Shown one piece after another: positions 52,570-64,000 of a stretch of 64,000 bases of DNA. Each line of letters begins with the position of its first letter. Position 1 is the first letter of the stretch. The DNA is taken from contig NW_026889751.1 in assembly GCF_033153115.1 (NCBI RefSeq), positions 62,001 through 126,000 on the forward strand, written 5' to 3'. Source of the DNA: Saccostrea echinata (taxonomy: Eukaryota). The notes under the pieces are model-generated. The model worked only from the letters and a program-made list of their open reading frames with translations. It searched no databases and was not told the origin of the DNA. Position numbers and translations under genes: made by a program.

Positions 52570-53580
52570 ATGGGAAAGAAATCCGACAGTGAAATAAAAC
52601 ATTTTCTGTTCGAAAACCTCACTTTACTCTTGATTTTCACTGCATTGTCGCTGTTATGTCAGCTCACAACCATTGCGACACCGGGATGGATGAAGTTCCA
52701 TTTGGAGTTCTACGATGACGTCATAGAGTCGTCTGCGACAAACGGGTCCACTGGTACTATATCTGACCTGTCGGCAGAAGTATCGGCTGGACTTTGGTTT
52801 TTTTCATTCTGCTTTGAAGGACAATACCAAAACGGAACTGAATTAGCCTGTTTTACAGAAACCTTTGTTGATTATGATAACAAACACCTATCTAAGTTTC
52901 ACGTCCAACATCTTGAATTACTCAAAGAATTTTGCTGTAAGTAATTTCTTGTACTTTATATACCATTTCTTATTTGTTTTATAGTCTATGAATGCCCTTT
53001 TATGCTAATTTTACTTTTTCCAGTCAATGCATTAAGTGGCCTTTTGGAGTACCAGATTGAGGCATCCATTAGCATAGCCTGCCTCATGATAGGGTTAGTG
53101 TCGTTTCTTCTGTACTACAGACCGAAGGTTATAAGACGGGGATTTGGCATTGTAGCATGCGCTTGTTTTGCAGTTTCAGGTGGGGAATTTAATATTTTGC
53201 TGGGTGAAAAACCAAGTTTTCAATATACCGACGCATTAATCATAAAGACTTTGTACACTTTTTCAGCTATCATGCTATGGGTAGTTGTTGGTAAGATAAC
53301 TACCATCACCCTCCAGATGAAGAAGACTTTCCAGTTCCCTGCAGCGGCGAGTCACGTGACTATTACCGTCCTTATCCCCTGGTGTCTGATTGTGGCTGGA
53401 GCAGCCGCCTTGATGACGTCATTCTCTACCATAACTTTTCTTGTCTATCTGGCCCAGGACAAAACACCAGATAATAAATACCACAAGACAGAAATTCGAG
53501 AGCCTATTTTACAGGACGACCATCTGCCGTGCTGTTCTCATAACAATAACCATTCAATACCCATGACACGTTTTAAGTAA
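52570..53580 (+). CDS. Four-TM claudin/PMP22-like membrane protein. Exons 52570-52936, 53024-53179, 53267-53580
   Basis: TM1 followed by ATPGW, a GLW....C..C extracellular loop signature, then three further hydrophobic segments. GT-AG introns are in phase. Confidence 0.75.
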
Positions 53581-54636
53581 ACTTTAGATCACTTAAGGCT
53601 GCAACATTGGAAAATTTTAGTAAAAGAAATGCACTTAAACCGTTTACAATTTCTTTTTAACGACTTCTTTAACCAAGCAGACTTAATATCCACTTAAGAA
53701 TGAATTCTTTAGTGAAAGAATTGGTATCCAAATTGATTCAATTGGAGATGACCTTGAAAAACGTCTGTATTTGTCCTTTGTGGCAACACATTTTTCATTC
53801 AGATAAAAGTACTGAAGCGTTACTATCTTTCTTAATCTGTGACGGGATTTTAAAGACATCAGATAGATTTTTCACTAATTAAAGAAAAGCATTGTGTACA
53901 TAGTGATAAGTGAAATCGTGTATATAAATTTTATTAAAGTTGTATATTGCACTGTACAATAAATCATGTTTCATGTAATATGAATGCAACAACCCATGAT
54001 GAATAAAACAAAACCAAAAAGGTTTTTCCTTAATACATTAATTGTAGCTGCTATTAGAGTATACACATGTACATATAAGTACTTTAAAAAAACTGAACGG
54101 AAGGACATACTCTAACATCATATGAAAATGGTTAAAGTCAAATTGTCATAAATTCCAAAGTGTCAAATCTGTTTGATACATGTCTTATTCAACCTTAGAA
54201 ATGATAAATCATATTATCATACCATACAACTCAGATCATCACACTGTCTACTGCATGGACACTGGCAAGGCTAACTTTTCTTGAAATTTGAGTTAATTTG
54301 CGGTACATGTAAAGAGAGATATTTATAGTTCATTAACAAACTAGAATTAGGCTGTGTTGTATTAAAATGAATTGCTTAAACAGGTTATTGAGAGGATTGT
54401 AGTGCATATTATTAAAAAAAAATTCCCAAAAGTCAATTTCTGTTACTGTTGCTACAAAACATGACTATGGTTTACCAAACTAAAATTTACTGATGTTTTC
54501 AATACAGAGAAAACTTGCTCTGATTTAATCCCCATATTTGGCACTATTTGACATAACAAATGGTATCTGATTTCAATGTGAGCAATGCATAAAGAGTAGA
54601 CTGAAATGGATTTTGAACCTTAATGTCACATACATG

Positions 54637-54812
54637 TCAAATGGAGAAAAAAAGTCTCTTCTTGTACAAAACCAGTGCTACAAGGACAAAGAATACTGTG
54701 CCCCATAAGTCCATAAAGAGTAGAGCAAAATGTTCAGAAGACACTTTCCAGCTGATTGGAAAATGACGATGTAAAACTTCATGTCCCATGTACAACAGAA
54801 TAGGGTTCATAC
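54637..54812 (-). CDS. HGSNAT: HGSNAT alternative terminal exon, distal copy (176 nt coding)
   Basis: ttttccag acceptor. [24 protein letters not shown]...[11 protein letters not shown]. Confidence 0.88.
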
Positions 54813-57800
54813 CTGGAAAAGGAAAATTTTTATACATTAATATTCCATTTATGCTGCTATTGAATAACTTACTCAGTCTTTTCATGAGTTACCAGGTATA
54901 CACAAATTTGTATTAAACATGTTCACTTTGCAAAACTTTTGATCCAAATCACTTGAAAAGTGCAAGTGTACTTTGTTAATTTCTTGTTTGTCAACAATTT
55001 TTCTAATAATTAAAAAAAAAGCATGTCTTGAAATAAATTGAATACCTTAACAAAATTATGTAACTGAGGATTTAGAGAAGTTCTGCCTTTTATTTTACAA
55101 GGAAAAAATTTAAATGGTAAGCATTATTGGGTAATTTAAGCTGCACTGTATTGCAGATAAAAAATGAAACTGCTAGTTGTATTTTTTTCCAAAGCAGTGC
55201 ACATCTGTGTCATGATATCATTAACATCAGATGAAATAAAGAACAGTGAAAACCCTTGTTTTCTGGCTTAATTCCAGAGTGGATTATAAACATAATGCCC
55301 ATAAGACAATGCTCACCTGAGTCACATTAATCATCAAGAATTAAAGCTTTTTAAATGGGCATGCAGATCTTTTTGATAACTATACCATTTTTCAACATAG
55401 CAATCAAAAACTTTAGTTTTAAAAGTAGAAAATGTTTTGTTTGGGGTCTCCATAGGACTTCAAACCAGTTTGTGATTTTAGCATGAAGCCAACCTGGAGA
55501 AGACTGAAATCTATTTCAAAAAGACTGAAAACTTTAGTTTACAAGGAATTTCAAAAAGTTAACAAATGACAAGACTTTTTTAATTAAACTGTTAGAAACG
55601 GAAGTGACTTGGCTGAAGCTGAAAATGAATCTCTCAACAAGACTGTAATGCCTAGCTTGGAATTACACACTTCTCAAAATCAGAAGCATCACGTTGGGAT
55701 TTTAACCAATTCCTTTAGAAAGTAACAAGAAGTCTCCATATTCTGCATTTATATGTATATCAATGTACAAAATTTACACATTTGAATATAGAGAAATGTT
55801 AAAAAGTGCACCATTCAGAAAGACAACAAAAACTTTGATTGTATAAACTCCGCTTAATTTAGGTAAAAAGCAAATGCAAGGTATAATTATGGTACTTAGT
55901 GTTTGAGTGATACATAAAGCAGCATATCTTAAGGGCTGTATTCATAACAGATTTCAATATAAACCTGTCATTCAAAAGATATTTCTACATTTTTATGCTA
56001 AATTTTCTTTCTTGCAATTTAACTAGCCTTTCTTATGTAAGATTGGTACACTGCAATGATAAAAATTGCATTTGATTTCAGGAAAATGGGATGTTCAGTT
56101 TTGGGATTTGCTAGGGAGAGTTATATAATTGCAATTCTCACATATTAGTTTTCAAATGGCGATGTAAATCTTTTTACAATGCATCATGTAGGTAAAGAGA
56201 CAAAAGAAGGCTGGGCCCCACAAGTGTAGTGCCAGAAGCTGCCAGTGGTTTTCATCCACCTTCCAACCAACAGGGAAAAAATTCTGATACGTAGTGTGGG
56301 CAATGTACATAAAAATGGAGTTCATGCCTGTCAAAGGACAAGTACCACAGAGCATTTTATCTAAATACTGTGTCATCAACAGCATATCTTATAAGATACA
56401 TTTTATTTAATTAACTCCATATTTAAACTTCCAATTATATGTACAGTTAATAATTTTTTTGAGTATAAACTGATGTCACTATGTACATATATGTGTATAT
56501 CAAGTATTTAATATAAGCATGTATATGTTAAAAAAAAATATCTTTATCTTTTAACAATGACTGTATCCCTCTTTTTTTTTTTTATTTATCTTTGAAATAA
56601 ACATCTTCTCTTAATTTTAGTAATATATCAAAACAGCAATATTCTTGTGTAGTTGAAAAAAAGTGAATAAAATCTCTCTTTGTTGTACGTCTAACTCACT
56701 GATCTAATTGATAAAACTCAGAAGTTATTGTTGATGATTTACTTTTTACATTAATGTGTAATTAATGAAGATAATAGAAGAGGTGTTTAGCACCTTACCT
56801 GGGAAATAAAATGGTGCCCCACTCCACACTTTATAAACATCTATGGTAAGGTAACAAAATGCTAACAAGAAAAAGGCAAAGCCTGCCATGCACAGAACAA
56901 AAGATAATGACCTGTAAAAAATAGAAGTATAAATGAACTAGAAAAATCTTTTCAGATAATAATCATTGTTTGGTTATTTTCAATAATTCTGAATATGTTT
57001 TTTTTCAAAATTAATTCTAATGTCATTTTCATAAATCATCCATATTGCATGCACAATGATAAAAGCACAGATAATATATTAATGATATAAACTGAGATTC
57101 AGTCTTTTTATATGATGTCTTACCATAAATTTTTATTGATTGGAATTGCTCCTCCATCTTTTTTAAATTCACATAAAGCACCGGCAATTATACACTACAA
57201 AACACCATAAACATACATGTACATGTTGAATTCATGTCCCATAAAATGTATCATGAATCTCTTCATGAAGTGTTAAAACATTAATATAACCTGATTTCTA
57301 GTGTAATTCACATTCTCCACAGCTGCATCCATTTGCAAAGTTTTTTTGATTCTAGGCCTTAAAACTACATAAGTCCAGAAGGAATTTGACGTACTTGAAC
57401 ATATCATCTTAATTAAAGATCACAGCCACCTTAAAGTGTGTGACACGCCTACCTAAGATGCATTAACTAACCAGTTTGATTATTCTATGCCAAATAATTT
57501 TCCAATTAAGAACCAGAAGGTTTTGCCATATTTGACCTTAACACCATTATTTGTCACAGAGACTTATATTTCAAGTGTGACACACATTCCACCAAAAATG
57601 CATCAGTTGAAAAAATTTGATGATTCTAAGCCACATAATATTTAAGTTACAAAGCTAACAGATGAATAAGGATGGACATGCATGCCATACATACACCCCA
57701 TTTAAAGGTACATGTATAAAATTTGAAAGGGAACGTTATCTACACTTACCAAAATTACCCCCCAAATTATAAATCTCTTCACTCGGGCTGCTGGCTCTTT

Positions 57801-60800
57801 ATATGTCATCAAAATTTTACCAGCCTATATAAAACAAAAATATCATTTATTGTTGTAAGAGCAATGTAATTATAGTTTCAAAGCTGGTATAAATGTTTTT
57901 TTTTATTCCAAATTTGATGAATAGTTTTTTAATTTAACATAACTAATATCTATAACCAAATAAAGTTGAATTTATTTAACATACTAAAAATCATGCACCT
58001 GTAGTCTCTTACCTGTAACCCTAAAAAACACAAAAATATGGAATTCAGTGTTCCTAAAAGCCCCTCTGGATCATAAGGCACTGTGGTTTTATATATCTCC
58101 TGTAAATCAAGAGATAGATTGTTATCAGAAAACTTGATCCAACTTAACATCATTTAATACACTAAGAAATATATCTGTTCTTCAAACCTTGCATGTAGGG
58201 CTTTGGTAGATGTGTCCTTCCCCAAACACTTTTCTATCAATGTAGCCTGCAGCACCACCTGTACAGTTCATATGTTGTCCATTTTCATGTAGACCACCAG
58301 GTCCTACATATCCTCTGAAAGAAAACACAAGAATAACTTAAAACATCAATAAACACAACAAAGGAAGATTCTTACTTTAGAAAACAGACAGCAGTGTTCA
58401 AAATATTGTATAAAAACTGAAAAAAATTTCACTGTATAATTCTGTGGCCTTGATGCTTTATAATTGTCCTGGCAATGACACAACTCATGTTACAAGACAC
58501 ATTTACTCTAAACAATTCACGACCATGCTACATCTTCCCATCAAACACCTTAGTCCTACTTTTGATACATTATATAACAGCTTTTAATGATTTACATTTC
58601 CAAATTCTCAGCTTGTCAGGAAGCAGGCCAGACATATACAGTAAACCACAGTTGTATGTAGCAAACATGAATTTACACTTACAGGGAAGTGATTTTCATT
58701 TCAGTTTTAAGATGTGTTGTGAACAGATATATAGAATTACATTTGTAATGAATCAAAATTGTTAGTCCCTGGCACTTCACTATATTAAAAAGTTTTGCTG
58801 TATGCTGATCATGATCAAGGCATGAGAAACATGATTTTTTAAAATCCATTAACAAAAAAGCTCATGATTAATATACAACATTGCTCTCCTCTCTCTCTCT
58901 TTCTATCTTACTTGGGACAGCCCGGTACATCTAATACGAAGGTGATAACAATATGGGCAGTCACAAAAACGAGATAAAATATCCATTCCAGCCAATAATC
59001 CACAATGTCTCGGATAAAGCCCCAGTAGGTGTACTGAAAGTAAGGAATTAAAATTATCAGTTTGATGACTGCTTTATTTTTTACAAACAGGTTAATTCTT
59101 CACACTGAATGGATCCATCCTTTGTCCATATGATAAATATTTCTTATTCAAGTACCTTGTTTATCAGTTGAGTTTGAAAATCAGAACAAATGCTTAATTA
59201 AGGGAATAGCAAATTCTAGAAATAATAACTTAAAAAAAGCATATACATGTACATGTATACATATAGCTCTTTGGTACACTGTAAGCTGATATAAATAATT
59301 TTGAATCAACTGAGTCCAAAATAATAGGTACCAGTATTTTGCTTTAACCATCCTCTACCTGTATATAAATATGAAATCATTCATTAAACCGAGAAAACCT
59401 TGTGGATGTGATTCATATGATTATTTTGTTTCAAACTACTTCAAGACATATCATTTATTTTATTCTTTAACTTTGACCCTTGCTTTTGATTACAAATCTT
59501 CATTTAATATTCCCCTATGTGTGACTTGGGAATGGAGTCAACAGGCAAGATTTTGGTTATTGAGAGATATCAATGATACAGACATATGACTTTAATGATA
59601 AATCAATTGATATAAAAATACACTGTCATCTGCAGGGACCTTTACTCTCCCTGACAGGCAGACAGACAGATAAAGTGATGTCTATATATCCGCCATGCAC
59701 GGGTGACACAAATAACATATGAAATTTGAGATTCCTTTTATTTTAAGTATAAATATTGCTGTTTCTTAAATAAATTCCACCTTGAAAGCTTTTATTTATC
59801 AATGTTTTAGTTTTACTATGCGAAACAATCATTTTTACTTTTTTATCAAGCCTTCTAAATTTCAAGCGTATGTCTCAGTACATCTTGCAAGACCTGCTGA
59901 AGAAGATGACTGGTTAACACACAGTTGTATTTTACCTTGTGCTAATGTATAAATTAAGAGCTAGGTTGTTGTTAATGAATAAAAATTCCATCTTATTCAA
60001 ATTAAGTCAAATGCAAAAGCAATTTATTTTGCCCAAAGTGGCCCATGTCAAAAAAAATATATATTTATGGAGATCCTGTTGAATAGTAGCCCTCTCTTGA
60101 AAACATCAAATTAAAAATATCGGAGAGGGCTATATTGTTGAAGCTAATTTATGTATATCTAATCATCGGGCTCCAAAACTCAGCAAACCAACTTAACTTC
60201 AAAATCAAATTTGAAAGAACAAAACAAAACTTACTGCATACCTACCATGCTAACATCCACTGTTTTGGCAAAAAACATGTGAATGGATGCCACGACAAAG
60301 TATGTTCCAGCGAACCTCTGTAATACGCCAGGTATTCTCAGCTTAGTAAGAGCAGTAGCTGTCAAAACAAATAAAAACTGTAGATTATGATAAAAAAAAA
60401 ACCCACAAAGTGTAGATTTTAACTTGGACCTAAGTTATATATGTCTCTAAATAAAATGTGTTTACCTTGTGAAGTGTCATTCAATATATACACATGTTAA
60501 AGATTTTATTCTTTGTTTAATTTTTTTTTCCTTTTTCACATGGGATTGATAGAATATTTACATCCAATGAATATTATGTCCTTTATTTCTTAAGAAAACC
60601 ATTGCTGTTTATCTGTCAGTAAACAGCAATAAGCATATCACCTGTACAGATTTCTTGAGCAGTGGCTGTTCCATCAATGAAACTTACAATGACATATATA
60701 TCAACAATACACTATTTCATCTACTAAATCCTACTTTCAATGATTATTTGTACAGATATAAGTATAAACAATAAAATGTCTTTCTTTGTTTGTTAGTATG

Positions 60801-63344
60801 GGAAATAACTATGCAGCTATTGCAGAAAAAAATTACATATGCATTTTTTCTGCAACAGCTGCAACATTAATTCCCATACTAACAACCAAAGAAAGCATTT
60901 TATTGTTTAAATAATTTTACTTCATATACATGTATATGCAAATTTTCTATAATTCAAGGCTAAAAATACTAGAAAGCTTAAGCATTTACTGAGAAAAGAT
61001 TGTCAACACAAAGAAAAATTTCCTCTGTAATAAATTCCTACATAAGAAGTCTGTACAATGTAAGTTAGACCTTGCTAATTTGCTATGATTGTTTTAATGC
61101 AGATACATACCCTCACATCCTCCCGTGTTTATCAGTAAACCCAACACAAACAAAATGCAGCTCCTCTTAAATATTTTCCAGAAAATTTTGTGTTTGGGGG
61201 TGACTCTTCTTAACAGTCCTGTAAATGAGTACACCATGGCTGTGCCCATAATCCAAATAAACCTGCAATGTTACACAATCCAAAAATGGACTTTCAAATC
61301 TGCAACGCTTCCAAACTATGTTTAGCAAAGTATACTCATTTATTACAAAAAAATATGTAAATTTATTATTCATACAAAATCAAAATTAAATTCCCATATA
61401 AAAATCGAAACTTATTATTTTGCATGTTTTCTAACTTTATTTTAAATTCCTTGAGGGAATTAATTAAAAATATTGTAAATTACAAGAAAGAAAACAATCC
61501 TTTGACCTACACAATGCTGTTAAATGTAGCAAACAATATGCACCAATGTTTAGTAAATAGAAAGTGCAGCAAAACAGAAGATCAGTGAGAGGTACTTACT
61601 CAGTGATAGCGAGTATATATAGGGTAAGTAAAATACGAGTGAATTACCATGGAAACACAAGATCTGCCACAGTCAGACCATTCCAGTCAGAGTGGTCAAA
61701 AAACCAGTAGCCACCACCCCCATAGTTCACAAAATTCATGATGGTCAAACTGATTCTACAAGCACCACATGCAGACAAGAAAATTCCATGTATATTTACT
61801 GCTAATGAATCTAAATACTAGTGATGGCATAAAGGCTTTTACCGGTTAGTTAATAGAGAATAAAACAACAACTCAATGATGCAAGCTGTACTTGGTGAAA
61901 CAAAAGCAATCACTGAATAATAAAAACATAAAAATACATAAGAGTGATTGTTTTATTAGTAGATTATAAATTGATATTTCTTAATCACTTCCAAAGCACT
62001 GTAGATTCCTAAATGTACGTTAAGAATTTATAAACACGTAATTTTGTGAGAAGCACATCTTGCGAAATAAAATTACTTGACAATACTTTTATTTTTCTAT
62101 GGATGAAATGAATGTAAACAAGAGGCCCATGGTGACATTGCTCACCTGAGCACTTCGGCTACAAAAAAAATGAAATTAGTTCAGTACTAAAAAATTTTAA
62201 TATAAAAGTGTTGCCCCACCCTACCTCGGGGGTCATGATTTGAAAAAACTTGATTCTACACTACCTGAAGATGCTTTTATGTAAAAATGACCAATCATGG
62301 CTTAGCTGTTATTAACAGTAAGACTTAAAAGATTTTCCTTATGTATTCCTATGTAAAAATTGGGTCACCCACTGTGGCCCCTCCCTACACCGGGGGTCAT
62401 GGTTTGAACAAACTTGCTTCTACACTATCTGAAGATGCTTTTATGTAAATATGACCAATCATGGCTTTGCTGTTCTTGAGAAGAAGAATTTTAAAAATTT
62501 TTCCTATGTATTCCTATGTAAAACTTTTATCACCCATTGTGGGGGGTTCATGATTTGAATAAACTTGAATCTTTACTACCTCAGGATGATTCCACAAAAG
62601 TTTCATAAATTCTAGCACAGTAGTTCTTGAGGAGAAGATTTTTAAATGATGCCATAAATTTTCACAAATTTATAATTATCTCCCCTTGAAACAAGGCAAG
62701 GCCCTTCAAACTTGAATCTCCTTTACCCATGGATACTTTGTGGCAAGTTTAGTTGAAACTGGCCCAGTGGTTCTTCAGAAGAAGATGAAAATGTGTTTTA
62801 AGTTTACATCGATGACAACAGCCAATGGACAAATTTTGATCAGAATAGCTCACTTGAGCCTTCAGCTCAGGTGAGCTAAAAACTCAACATCAACAGTCCT
62901 CTTACAATTTCATATTCTCACGATTTGACATTTATGAGTCATTTCACAAAATTAAGTCCTCGCAAAAAATAAGGAATTTACAGTATAATGTAAGTTCAAA
63001 AGACTTGTATTAAAATGAAGTGCTCTCATACATCTCATCATATATGAAATCTGACACATTTACTTCAAAGTAATACTTCATTAGCATGTAGAAAATAATA
63101 TAAAATACAGTAACATAAATCAAACACAGACTGTTAGTAAATGCAAGTCAGAGGAGATTGAAAATGATTGCTAATTCGGTAGCTATATATAGTCACATCA
63201 ACACCAAAGCAAAGAATGACATCATGCATGTCTCACCATGGAAACACAAGGTCAGCAAATGTTAAACCATTCCATCGACTATGACGGAAAAACCAGTATC
63301 CCCCTCCGCCGTAATTAACAAATATCATAACGATTATACTAATC
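54637..63344 (-). CDS. HGSNAT: Heparan-alpha-glucosaminide N-acetyltransferase, 3' part. Exons 63237-63344 OR 61648-61755, then 61111-61262, 60246-60358, 58912-59033, 58188-58314, 58013-58099, 57750-57824, 57124-57194, 56799-56911, then 56152-56327 OR 54637-54812
   Basis: Motifs [98 protein letters not shown]. The 5' exons lie beyond the window. Confidence 0.95.
56152..56327 (-). CDS. HGSNAT: HGSNAT alternative terminal exon, proximal copy (176 nt coding)
   Basis: ctttgacag acceptor. [24 protein letters not shown]...[11 protein letters not shown]. Confidence 0.88.
60765..60909. mobile_element. Palindromic fold-back element (MITE-like) in HGSNAT intron
   Basis: taaacaataaaatg.tttctttg.ttgttagtatgggaa..tgcagct.ttgcagaaaaaa, then its reverse complement after a short loop. 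Confidence 0.8.
61648..61755 (-). CDS. HGSNAT: HGSNAT catalytic-His exon, copy B (108 nt)
   Basis: [36 protein letters not shown], with AG/GT boundaries and phase 2-2. Confidence 0.9.
62116..62882. mobile_element. HINE with ~165-bp monomers, between the duplicated HGSNAT exons
   Basis: aaacaagaggcccatgg..gctcacctgag start, agctcacttgagccttcagctcaggtgagctaaaa end. Same family as 47595-48912. Confidence 0.8.
63237..63344 (-). CDS. HGSNAT: HGSNAT catalytic-His exon, copy A (108 nt)
   Basis: [36 protein letters not shown], with AG/GT boundaries and phase 2-2. Confidence 0.9.
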
Positions 63345-64000
63345 CTGAAAGTCAAAATTGTCTGATTATAAAATTAAAAGCCCTTTGTGGTCACCTATGT
63401 ATCATTTTCTTAGCATTCTCCCTATACATATATCACTTTCATGTCACCAAAAAAATTATAATATAAAATCATAAATACAATGTATTTGTAGACACCATAG
63501 TTTAAACTTTTCCTTATTACCGGTAGTCAGAAAGGTACATTTATTAACTACCATGGTACTACTTTGGTATTTCTCCAAAGGATAAAAGATCGATAAAGAC
63601 AAAATGGAGGTAAATCCCTGTACACTAGCTATTAGACCTAGATAATGAGTGTATTTGCTAACAAACTATTTTATCAACATGTATATATATAATTTATTTA
63701 CATGTAGATTTACATGTAGAGTTTATAGTTTCATTGCTTTGACTTTTAATCTGACTTAAGGGCAATCCAGACACAAAAGGAAAGTAACATTATTTATAGT
63801 TATAATAAATAAACAGAAATAATAGGAATTCAGTTTTCCTAAATATTCATATAAAAATTAAAGCCACTTTACAATATTTTGCTTGAATGTGATGTTTTAT
63901 AAATATTGGATTATGTGCAATTTGTGCACAAAAATAGCTTTTAAAATAGCTGTTGAATGATATTGTATGACTTCAAACAGGTCAAATTTTACACCTTATC

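What the first reader, a model, noticed from the sequence alone, without database searches (positions are those of the whole stretch)
54637..56327. HGSNAT also has two alternative terminal exons of identical coding length
Seen: both exons are 176 nt to the stop, with phase-1 acceptors that fit the exon ending at 56799. The distal copy keeps the human-like YMGHE (human YVGHE). The proximal copy has YIAHT and ends in YIAI, a YxxPhi-type motif, versus LFFSI. Each has a downstream minus-strand AATAAA (55089-55094 and 53930-53935). Inference: the choice swaps the last TM helices, possible sorting signals and the 3' UTR.
Basis: partly seen in the sequence, partly recalled or inferred. Interest (0 to 1): 0.75.

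Follow-up and report, generated by a model that had tools for sequence, protein, structure and literature searches.

The report
Stop-bearing duplicate last exon in oyster HGSNAT
An oyster gene for the lysosomal membrane enzyme HGSNAT carries two old copies of its last coding exon, both are used in RNA, and including or skipping the upstream copy swaps the enzyme's last two membrane helices and tail.

Summary
Two 176-nt minus-strand stretches (56327-56152 and 54812-54637) are homologous: 94 of 176 nt and 21 of 57 aa are identical. Both match the C-terminus of human HGSNAT and both fit the phase of the exon ending at 56799.

Spliced RNA contigs show both are used. The junction 56799>54812 is in 4 of 4 runs and 56799>56327 is in 3 of 4.

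In 2 of 4 runs the upstream copy is spliced on from a GT donor 10 nt after its stop (56142>54812). It is therefore an optional 186-nt cassette with its own stop, and the downstream copy then serves as 3' UTR. One contig reads through that donor, so a minor unspliced or separately polyadenylated form is not excluded.

The two products equal RefSeq predicted isoforms X2 and X1 named for Saccostrea echinata. The same pair of C-terminal types appears as predicted isoforms in 12 of 24 species checked, both bivalves and gastropods. The upstream type forms one clade with conserved residues of its own.

This is a new, old and conserved member of a known kind: a C-terminal substitution from tandem exon duplication. 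My searches found no paper on it. The scan had already followed up the sister event (the duplicated catalytic exon) in this same gene.

The parts
56799..56911 (-). Constitutive penultimate coding exon (113 nt), ending in phase 1 before donor GTAAGG. It encodes ...[37 protein letters not shown](G), up to the Pro-Gly kink of TM10.
   Evidence: Sequence. Joints 56909/56911>57122/57124, 56799>56327 and 56799>54812. 100% match to P0170 and P0174 residues 542-579.
56142..56327 (-). Proximal copy: an optional 186-nt cassette exon. Coding runs 56327-56155 (57 aa after the shared Gly), then 10 nt, then the donor.
   Evidence: Joint 56799>56327 in X1, X2 and X3. Joint 56142>54812 in X1 and X2 (245-nt contigs with 30 and 28 nt of the flanking exons). 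58 of 58 aa identical to the end of P0170.
56152..56154 (-). Stop codon TGA of the proximal copy, 10 nt upstream of the exon-exon junction.
56140..56141 (-). GT of the cassette's 5' splice site (TAT|GTGAGA).
   Evidence: for the sequence. for the joint (skips 1329, ends CT..AC on the + strand).
54813..56141 (-). Intron between the cassette and the last exon. It is covered at low depth (about 2-5) in all four runs. It is unique in the genome.
   Evidence: tables 2 and 8; 1 match in G000, which is itself.
54637..54812 (-). Distal copy: the coding part of the last exon (176 nt including stop TGA 54639-54637). It is translated when the cassette is skipped and is 3' UTR when the cassette is included.
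   Evidence: Joint 56799>54812 in 4 of 4 runs. The end of P0174 matches at 61 of 62 aligned aa, an alignment that runs a few residues into the intron. P0174's last 58 residues read the same as the distal peptide.
53910..54636 (-). 3' UTR of the last exon. The end is approximate. AATAAA lies at 53935-53930.
   Evidence: Contigs cover 54812 down to 54086 (X3) or on past 53401 (X1, X2, X5), where they merge with a convergent + strand gene. Hexamer position. Contigs cannot show the true end.
55089..55094 (-). Its use is not shown.
   Evidence: Contigs lie on both sides of it (54868-55102, 54913-55071, 54992-55521).

Best explanation
The last coding exon of this molluscan HGSNAT gene was duplicated in tandem before bivalves and gastropods split. 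The downstream copy (54812-54637, plus its UTR) is the constitutive last exon. The upstream copy (56327-56142) is an optional cassette.

When the cassette is skipped, the protein ends ...[10 protein letters not shown] (RefSeq isoform X1). When it is included, translation stops at its own TGA. That stop lies 10 nt before the junction to the last exon. The protein then ends ...[10 protein letters not shown] (isoform X2) and the downstream copy is only 3' UTR.

The exon boundary falls at the Pro-Gly kink of TM10. The choice therefore exchanges, as one unit, TM10b (which lines the acetyl-CoA pore), the last luminal loop, TM11 and the 8-residue cytosolic tail.

Shown: the homology, both junction sets, the identity with the predicted isoforms, the age, and the conservation.

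Inferred: the stop so close to the junction spares the mRNA from nonsense-mediated decay. The two modules also tune the enzyme. The residues that mark the upstream type sit on one face of TM10b (F609; A or C instead of G613) and one face of TM11 (P644, C648, T651, H655, human-like numbering). Among them is His in place of the Tyr that is mutated in human MPS IIIC (Y627C in the 635-residue numbering), which lies near the pocket for the acetyl-CoA head group.
For: - Homology and frame.
- RNA (4 runs laid): 56799>54812 in 4 of 4 runs; 56799>56327 in 3 of 4; 56142>54812 in 2 of 4, from two samples. All skipped stretches have GT..AG ends.
- Identity with RefSeq-named isoforms: P0170 and P0174 have identical 579-aa bodies and differ only in the last 57 aa.
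- Spread: both C-terminal types appear as predicted isoforms of one gene in 12 of 24 species examined. These include Patella and two Haliotis species.
- Tree of 48 terminal peptides over 57 columns: the 10 upstream-type rows form one clade, support 94/90, and form one side of a branch in 100% of 200 bootstrap trees.
- Constraint: upstream-type copies are more alike between species than downstream-type copies in 30 of 45 species pairs. Saccostrea against Magallana is 89% versus 77%.
- Type-specific columns: F609 9/10 vs 0/22; P644 9/10 vs 0/22; C648 10/10 vs 0/22; T651 9/10 vs 0/22; H655 9/10 vs 1/22. I608, Y611, H614 and H633 are shared.
- Same layout in a distant clam-like contig, L005: upstream exon, then the upstream-type copy, then the downstream-type copy. 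Both copies are 179 nt to the stop, and GTAATG starts exactly 10 nt after the first stop.
- Structural meaning, from passages read in PMC11357348 and PMC11199644.
- The X2 protein models as an HGSNAT fold: pLDDT 75.2 and pTM 0.71; Foldseek 8vlg_A E 1.6e-40, TM 0.80.
Against: - All RNA evidence is from assembled contigs of runs whose RNA nature is only a guess in the record. The splicing shows that they hold RNA. They give no strand, no ends and no usable abundance.
- The cassette-to-last-exon joint is absent from X3 and X5.
- X3 instead has a 315-nt contig that runs 98 nt past the donor. The whole intron 54868-56141 also has low coverage, so an unspliced or separately polyadenylated form exists at some level.
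- GT[AG]A also follows the stop of both downstream copies (+7 in the window, +4 in L005), where the window's contigs show no splicing. The motif in L005 is therefore only suggestive.
- The upstream-type label in other species was assigned by sequence. Genomic order is known only for the window and L005.
- Only predicted (automated) isoforms stand for the other species.
- No functional difference between the isoforms has been measured. The decay argument rests on the mammalian 50-55 nt rule (recalled knowledge).
Confidence: 0.85

Rival explanations
1. These are true alternative last exons. The proximal copy ends transcripts at its own poly(A) site (AATAAA at 55094-55089 or ATTAAA at 55584-55579), so the two isoforms have different 3' UTRs.
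For: - X3 record 17 (315 nt) joins the upstream exon to the proximal copy and runs on 98 nt past the donor, to 56044.
- Low-depth contigs cover most of 54868-56034 in all runs.
- That stretch is unique in the genome.
- The hexamers are present.
Against: - The spliced joint 56142>54812 is present in 2 of 4 runs. The tool reports those contigs at depths of 30 and 20, against 4 for the read-through contig, although it warns that depth cannot rank forms.
- Coverage continues more than 200 nt past the AATAAA, to about 54868. That pattern fits a retained intron better than an end.
- A GT sits at the same +10 offset in L005.
- Contigs cannot show RNA ends either way.
Confidence: 0.12
2. The proximal copy is an unproductive 'poison' cassette. 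Its stop serves only to lower HGSNAT output, and the alternative C-terminus has no role as protein.
For: It is a cassette with an in-frame stop upstream of the last junction.
Against: - The stop is only 10 nt from the junction.
- The 57-58 codon frame is open in all 10 species compared.
- It has its own conserved residues.
- It forms one clade.
- It evolves no faster than the downstream copy, being more conserved in 30 of 45 species pairs.
Confidence: 0.03

Closest known systems
Tandem exon duplication-derived C-terminal substitutions (Martinez-Gomez et al., NAR 2021, PMC8373072, passages read; GBE 2022, PMC9741552, passages read)
   Same: - Two neighbouring homologous exons give two homologous C-termini of equal length.
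- The event is ancient, and both forms are conserved and expressed.
- In man, 77 of 236 such events are C-terminal and are rich in transmembrane helices.
   Different: - Those papers name alternative poly(A) use or frame-shifting exon skips as the route to C-terminal swaps.
- Here the upstream copy is a cassette in frame (186 nt = 3n) that ends translation with its own stop 10 nt before a splice donor.
- Both copies therefore sit in one mRNA.
- Those papers concern man, fly and worm. HGSNAT is not named in any passage I read from them.
Strict mutually exclusive exons (for example the duplicated catalytic exon of this same gene, 63355-63233 and 61778-61644; earlier finding s1-817746)
   Same: It is a tandem duplicate with the same phase and the same length, and only one copy is translated.
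   Different: Exclusion acts at translation, not at splicing. One search shows an mRNA that holds both copies.
Human HGSNAT (PDB 8vkj, 8jkv, 8tu9)
   Same: - Full-length match: E 2.4e-128.
- Same fold.
- The last exon starts at the same Pro-Gly|Met-Asn point.
- Pore-gating I608 and Y611, and H633, are kept in both oyster copies.
   Different: - The solved human chains show one C-terminus. I did not look at human transcripts.
- The oyster upstream type has His where man has the tyrosine of the YILYRKK stretch (Y627 in the 635-residue numbering).
- The oyster upstream type ends in YIAI.

Membership tests
HGSNAT (transmembrane N-acetyltransferase fold) | Full-length sequence similarity to human HGSNAT | tested here: met
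   P0170 against PDB: 8vkj_A E 2.4e-128, residues 67-633 on 94-660. The window's exons match P0170 and P0174 from residue 249 on.
HGSNAT (transmembrane N-acetyltransferase fold) | Luminal beta-sandwich plus 11-helix membrane domain | tested here: met
   AlphaFold2 model of P0170: pLDDT 75.2, pTM 0.71. Foldseek 8vlg_A E 1.6e-40, TM 0.70/0.80. Confidence over the alternative part is moderate (blocks 61-80).
HGSNAT (transmembrane N-acetyltransferase fold) | Asn and catalytic His 11 residues apart in TM2 / luminal loop 1 (N258 and H269 in PMC11357348) | tested here: met
   N266 and H277 of P0170 are invariant in the 50-sequence alignment A3. They lie in another exon, not in this finding.
HGSNAT (transmembrane N-acetyltransferase fold) | Pfam models PF07786 / PF16401 | tested here: not met
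   No Pfam family at E <= 0.01 for P0170 or P0174, and none relevant for the single exons. Some relatives carry these families in the precomputed column. I read this as weak models, because the PDB match is decisive.
HGSNAT (transmembrane N-acetyltransferase fold) | [quoted passage not shown] | not testable with these tools
   An enzyme assay of both isoforms is needed.
Tandem exon duplication-derived C-terminal substitution | Adjacent homologous exons, same phase, coding for the same part of the fold | tested here: met
Tandem exon duplication-derived C-terminal substitution | Both forms present in RNA | tested here: met
   junctions to each copy, in 4 of 4 and 3 of 4 runs.
Tandem exon duplication-derived C-terminal substitution | Orthologous pair kept in distant species | tested here: met
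   12 of 24 species show both types as predicted isoforms. The upstream type forms one clade. The same genomic order is seen in L005.
Mutually exclusive exons (strict sense) | Mature mRNA holds exactly one of the two exons | tested here: not met
   The 245-nt contigs in X1 and X2 join the cassette to the distal exon.
Alternative last exons / alternative polyadenylation | Each copy has its own 3' end | tested here: inconclusive
   There is a read-through contig in X3 and low intron coverage. Contigs show no ends, and coverage passes the AATAAA at 55094-55089.
YxxPhi lysosomal sorting signal | Tyr-x-x-bulky hydrophobic in the cytosolic tail, conserved with the isoform type | tested here: inconclusive
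   YIAI is at the very end of the proximal copy. Tyr is at that place in 5 of 10 upstream-type sequences and 3 of 22 of the others, with Phe in most of the rest. Function cannot be tested here.

The most novel reading that the evidence does not exclude
Molluscs use this cassette to make two enzymes that differ in how the acetyl-CoA pore is shaped and gated. The upstream-type module re-lines one face of TM10b and one face of TM11. It also replaces the tyrosine of the pi-network at the nucleoside pocket (the human MPS IIIC site Y627) with histidine. Combined with the alternative catalytic exon of the same gene, one locus would give up to four transmembrane acetyltransferases with different kinetics, pH response, acceptor choice or compartment. 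A further speculative point: the cassette is 3n long in both genomes seen (186 and 189 nt), so read-through of its stop would give an in-frame protein with both modules.
Probability: 0.3. Interest if true: 0.6.

Novelty: new member of a known kind. Interest (0 to 1): 0.42.

Why it matters
HGSNAT is a lysosomal enzyme that passes an acetyl group across the membrane, and its loss causes Sanfilippo syndrome type C in humans. Molluscs have kept two natural versions of TM10b, TM11 and the tail since before bivalves and gastropods split. The versions differ at a handful of fixed positions, one of them a human disease site.

That gives a ready-made comparison for asking what these helices do in gating, acetyl-CoA binding and sorting. 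It also adds a clear, RNA-supported example of a route to a C-terminal swap that the passages I read from the human surveys do not describe: a duplicated last exon turned into a cassette with its own stop just before a splice donor.

For annotation, it shows that the RefSeq X1/X2 models of this gene reflect real junctions.

Tried and rejected
- Pfam on the single exon peptides and on P0170/P0174 gave nothing useful.
- The search for homologous proteins restricted to the last 59 residues of P0170 found only P0170 itself. The word index is too coarse for a 59-aa part, so this says nothing about other species.
I could not fetch the genomic loci of the RefSeq genes of other molluscs. Order of the copies and the donor after the stop could be checked in only one foreign contig, L005.
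- The idea that the low coverage of the intron comes from a repeat was rejected: 54830-56130 has one match in the genome, itself.
- The idea that the C-terminal YxxPhi defines the upstream type was rejected. It is present in 5 of 10.
- A haplotype or assembly duplicate was rejected, given 37% aa identity and orthologues of each copy in other species.
- Ranking the isoforms by depth was not attempted, because the tool warns against it.
- Coupling with the catalytic-exon choice could not be tested. The contigs break at each bubble. RefSeq models show all four combinations in Patella, and both catalytic versions with the upstream type in Magallana gigas records, but these are automated models.
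- Paper searches for HGSNAT with oyster, mollusc or splicing terms found no study of this. Supplements were not opened, and subscription journals are not in the library.
Full-length work used the database proteins P0170 and P0174.
Full report
**What is in the sequence.** On the minus strand the exon 56911-56799 ends in phase 1 before GTAAGG. Two acceptors fit it...TTTGACAG|GCATGAAC at 56327 and ...TTTTCCAG|GTATGAAC at 54812. From each acceptor, 176 nt run to a TGA (56154-56152 and 54639-54637). The peptides are [57 protein letters not shown] and [57 protein letters not shown]. They share 94 of 176 nt without gaps and 21 of 57 residues. Against all PDB chains, each matches only the last 59 residues (605-663) of human HGSNAT with significance. 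The distal copy scores 38.0 bits, E 1.5e-8. The proximal copy scores 30.9 bits, E 1.9e-6. The hexamers carry little weight: five AATAAA/ATTAAA hexamers lie in the 3.1 kb scanned.

**RNA evidence.** The look-up of sequencing runs listed six runs that are only guessed to be RNA. I laid X1, X2, X3 and X5 on 53401-58400. X1 and X3 come from one sample, X2 from a second, and X5 from another study and organism label. Their contigs skip 88 to 1986 bases with CT..AC ends on the + strand, which is GT..AG on the minus strand, so they hold spliced RNA of this gene.

Three joints matter:
- 56799>54812, upstream exon to distal copy, in 4 of 4 runs.
- 56799>56327, upstream exon to proximal copy, in 3 of 4 runs (X1, X2, X3; not X5).
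- 56142>54812, in 2 of 4 runs (X1, X2).

The third joint was not foreseen. In each of X1 and X2 it sits on a 245-nt contig made of 30 nt of the upstream exon, 56326-56140, and 28 nt of the distal exon. The donor is TAT|GTGAGA, with GT at 56141-56140, 10 nt after the proximal stop. The proximal copy is therefore an internal cassette of 186 nt (56327-56142). When it is included, the distal copy follows it in the same mRNA as untranslated sequence.

**Evidence pointing the other way.** X3 has no such spliced contig. It has a 315-nt contig that joins the upstream exon to the proximal copy and runs 98 nt past the donor, to 56044. In all four runs, low-depth contigs (about 2-5) cover most of 54868-56034, on both sides of the AATAAA at 55094-55089. 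In X5 this happens without any contig on the proximal copy. The stretch 54830-56130 is unique in the genome, so this coverage comes from this locus. I read it as retention of the cassette's downstream intron, which would not change the protein. A minor form that ends at a poly(A) site of its own cannot be excluded, because contigs show no ends. The tool warns that contig depth cannot rank forms, so I give no ratio.

**Which gene and which products.** A profile of the two peptides found 278 proteins at E <= 0.001 among 1.84 billion representatives; 150 were listed. Through the Capitella protein P0027 I reached named relatives. P0170, named 'heparan-alpha-glucosaminide N-acetyltransferase-like isoform X2 [Saccostrea echinata]', ends exactly as the proximal copy. 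P0174, named isoform X1, ends exactly as the distal copy. Their 579-residue bodies are identical. The window's exons match them from residue 249 on, with 58 of 58 residues for the proximal end. P0170 matches human HGSNAT over its whole length at E 2.4e-128. It models as that fold: pLDDT 75.2 and pTM 0.71, and Foldseek 8vlg_A E 1.6e-40. Pfam gave no family for either protein. The genome holds one more HGSNAT-like gene, with a single terminal exon (G000:C46:2639323-2639496), and a weak piece with a stop on C4.

**Age and constraint.** I read the members of 20 protein clusters and, with P0170, P0174 and the three Ruditapes isoforms, sorted the isoforms by species. Of 24 species, 12 show both C-terminal types as predicted isoforms of one gene:
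- S. echinata, Magallana gigas, Mercenaria mercenaria, Ruditapes philippinarum, Pecten maximus and Argopecten irradians
- Mytilus edulis, M. galloprovincialis and M. trossulus
- Patella vulgata, Haliotis rufescens and H. rubra

Ten species show one type among the isoforms listed: Ostrea edulis, Crassostrea angulata, S. cucullata, Mizuhopecten, M. californianus, H. asinina, Littorina, Babylonia, Physella and the nemertean Tubulanus. Only cluster members were read, so this is no proof of absence. Two species are unclear. The chiton Liolophura has two alternative ends of uncertain type. Gigantopelta X1-X3 start like the upstream type and then read as if out of frame.

In 6 of the 10 pairs compared, the rest of the protein is identical. 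In the other 4 it differs by another alternative region. A tree of 48 terminal peptides over 57 columns puts the 10 upstream-type rows in one clade. Support is 94/90, and they form one side of a branch in 100% of 200 bootstrap trees. Patella and Haliotis group together inside it (96/85). The second paralogue forms another clade (98/93). Two caveats apply: there are few columns, and I assigned the labels by sequence.

Between species, the upstream type is more conserved than the downstream type in 30 of 45 pairs. Saccostrea against Magallana is 89% versus 77%.

**Same layout elsewhere.** The one scan of metagenome contigs gave one locus, L005 (3065 nt). It comes from an animal whose upstream-type exon is 83% identical to that of Mercenaria X2. 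It carries, in order:
- the upstream exon (about 461-573);
- an upstream-type copy (1152-1330);
- a downstream-type copy (2168-2346).

Both copies are 179 nt to the stop and have the same phase. GTAATG starts exactly 10 nt after the first stop, as in the window. GT[AG]A occurs at 0.75% of positions in L005, so the shared offset is unlikely to be chance. However, GT[AG]A also lies 4 and 7 nt after the stops of the two downstream copies, where the window's contigs show no splice. The motif alone therefore does not prove use in L005. Both cassettes are multiples of three (186 and 189 nt).

**What is swapped.** I read passages of PMC11357348 and PMC11199644. From these:
- TM10 is kinked at Pro-Gly (P575-G576 in the 635-residue numbering). 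That is exactly the exon boundary (...PG|MN...).
- TM10b lines the acetyl-CoA pore, and I608 and Y611 gate it.
- The last luminal loop takes part in the dimer contact.
- The start of TM11 touches the luminal domain and the loop with the catalytic histidine.
- H605 (H633 in the long numbering) makes a salt bridge to the luminal domain.
- The stretch YILYRKK is cited as a sorting motif whose deletion leaves the protein at the cell surface.
- Y627C is a disease mutation in a pi-network that makes room for the nucleoside head group.

Both oyster copies keep I608, Y611, H614 and H633. The columns that separate 10 upstream-type sequences from 22 others are these (positions from a vertebrate-like ruler):

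| Position | Upstream type | Others |
|---|---|---|
| F609 | 9/10 | 0/22 |
| 613 | A, C or F; G in 0/10 | G in 20/22 |
| P644 | 9/10 | 0/22 |
| C648 | 10/10 | 0/22 |
| T651 | 9/10 | 0/22 |
| M654 | 8/10 | 2/22 |
| H655 | 9/10 | 1/22 (Y in 18/22) |

Positions 609/613 and 644/648/651/655 are spaced i, i+4, i+7, i+11. That places them on one face of each helix. This is an inference from helical periodicity; I had no coordinates to check it. Position 655 is the human Y627 of the 635-residue numbering. The terminal tyrosine (YIAI) is present in only 5 of 10 upstream-type sequences and in 3 of 22 others. A sorting difference is therefore possible in oysters, but it is not what defines the type.

**How it most likely works.**
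- Shown: skipping the cassette gives X1 and including it gives X2.
- Inferred: with the stop 10 nt from the last junction, the X2 mRNA should escape decay by the 50-55 nt rule known from mammals (recalled). The two modules tune pore gating, acetyl-CoA binding or coupling to the luminal domain, and perhaps sorting.
- Not known: what controls inclusion. The proximal acceptor has the poorer pyrimidine tract (TTGTCCTTTGACAG against TTTTCCTTTTCCAG), which fits an optional exon.

**Known or new.** The kind is known. C-terminal substitutions from tandem exon duplication make up 77 of 236 such events in man (passages of PMC8373072, and PMC9741552). The isoforms themselves already stand in RefSeq as automated predictions. 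Four things are added here: the junction evidence, the cassette-with-stop architecture, the age (before the bivalve-gastropod split), and the residues that define the type. Searches found no paper on HGSNAT isoforms in oysters or molluscs. Supplements and subscription journals were not seen. The earlier finding s1-817746 on the duplicated catalytic exon of the same gene gave me the lead to look at RefSeq isoforms, and searches show those catalytic variants too.

Noticed in passing
window 63233-63355 and 61644-61778 (minus strand): Two homologous copies of the exon with the NYGGG...HS.WNG catalytic stretch. RefSeq isoforms of many molluscs carry one or the other. This is the subject of earlier finding s1-817746. 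Coupling with the terminal cassette could not be tested.
   Followed up: partly
G000:C46:2639323-2639496 (L003 1501-1674): A second HGSNAT-like gene has a single terminal exon (MNSLVVYVCHDVFYRFFPVNW...). It belongs to a separate clade found across molluscs.
   Followed up: partly
G000:C4:5977305-5977436 (L004 1504-1632): A weak match to the terminal exon (38-43% over about 40 aa) with one TGA inside. It may be a decayed copy.
   Followed up: no
window 53002-53580 (+ strand): A 192-aa open frame rich in hydrophobic stretches, with no Pfam family. In X1, X2 and X5, one contig runs from the HGSNAT 3' UTR into it. It is probably a convergent neighbour whose 3' end overlaps that of HGSNAT.
   Followed up: partly
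window 56142-56327; L005 1152-1340: The stop-bearing cassette is a multiple of three in both genomes (186 and 189 nt), so it would stay in frame with the distal copy if its stop were read through. No explanation.
   Followed up: no
proteins P0355, P0267, P0356 (Gigantopelta aegis X1-X3); P0333, P0334 (Liolophura sinensis X1, X3): The Gigantopelta models begin like the upstream type and then read as if frame-shifted. The chiton has two alternative ends that fall in neither clade.
   Followed up: no
proteins P0002, P0152, P0292 (Logan): These are open frames called through the natural stop of the terminal exons (Q or W at the stop), apparently called with another genetic code. After the stop of the Magallana-like upstream copy the residues ...C-K... 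would fit T|GTAAR, 13 nt after the stop. This is a back-translation guess only.
   Followed up: no
proteins P0316, P0324, P0331: Short unrelated proteins, two of them named for Spirochaetota, are listed as members of the Haliotis HGSNAT clusters. This is probably a fault of the cluster table.
   Followed up: no
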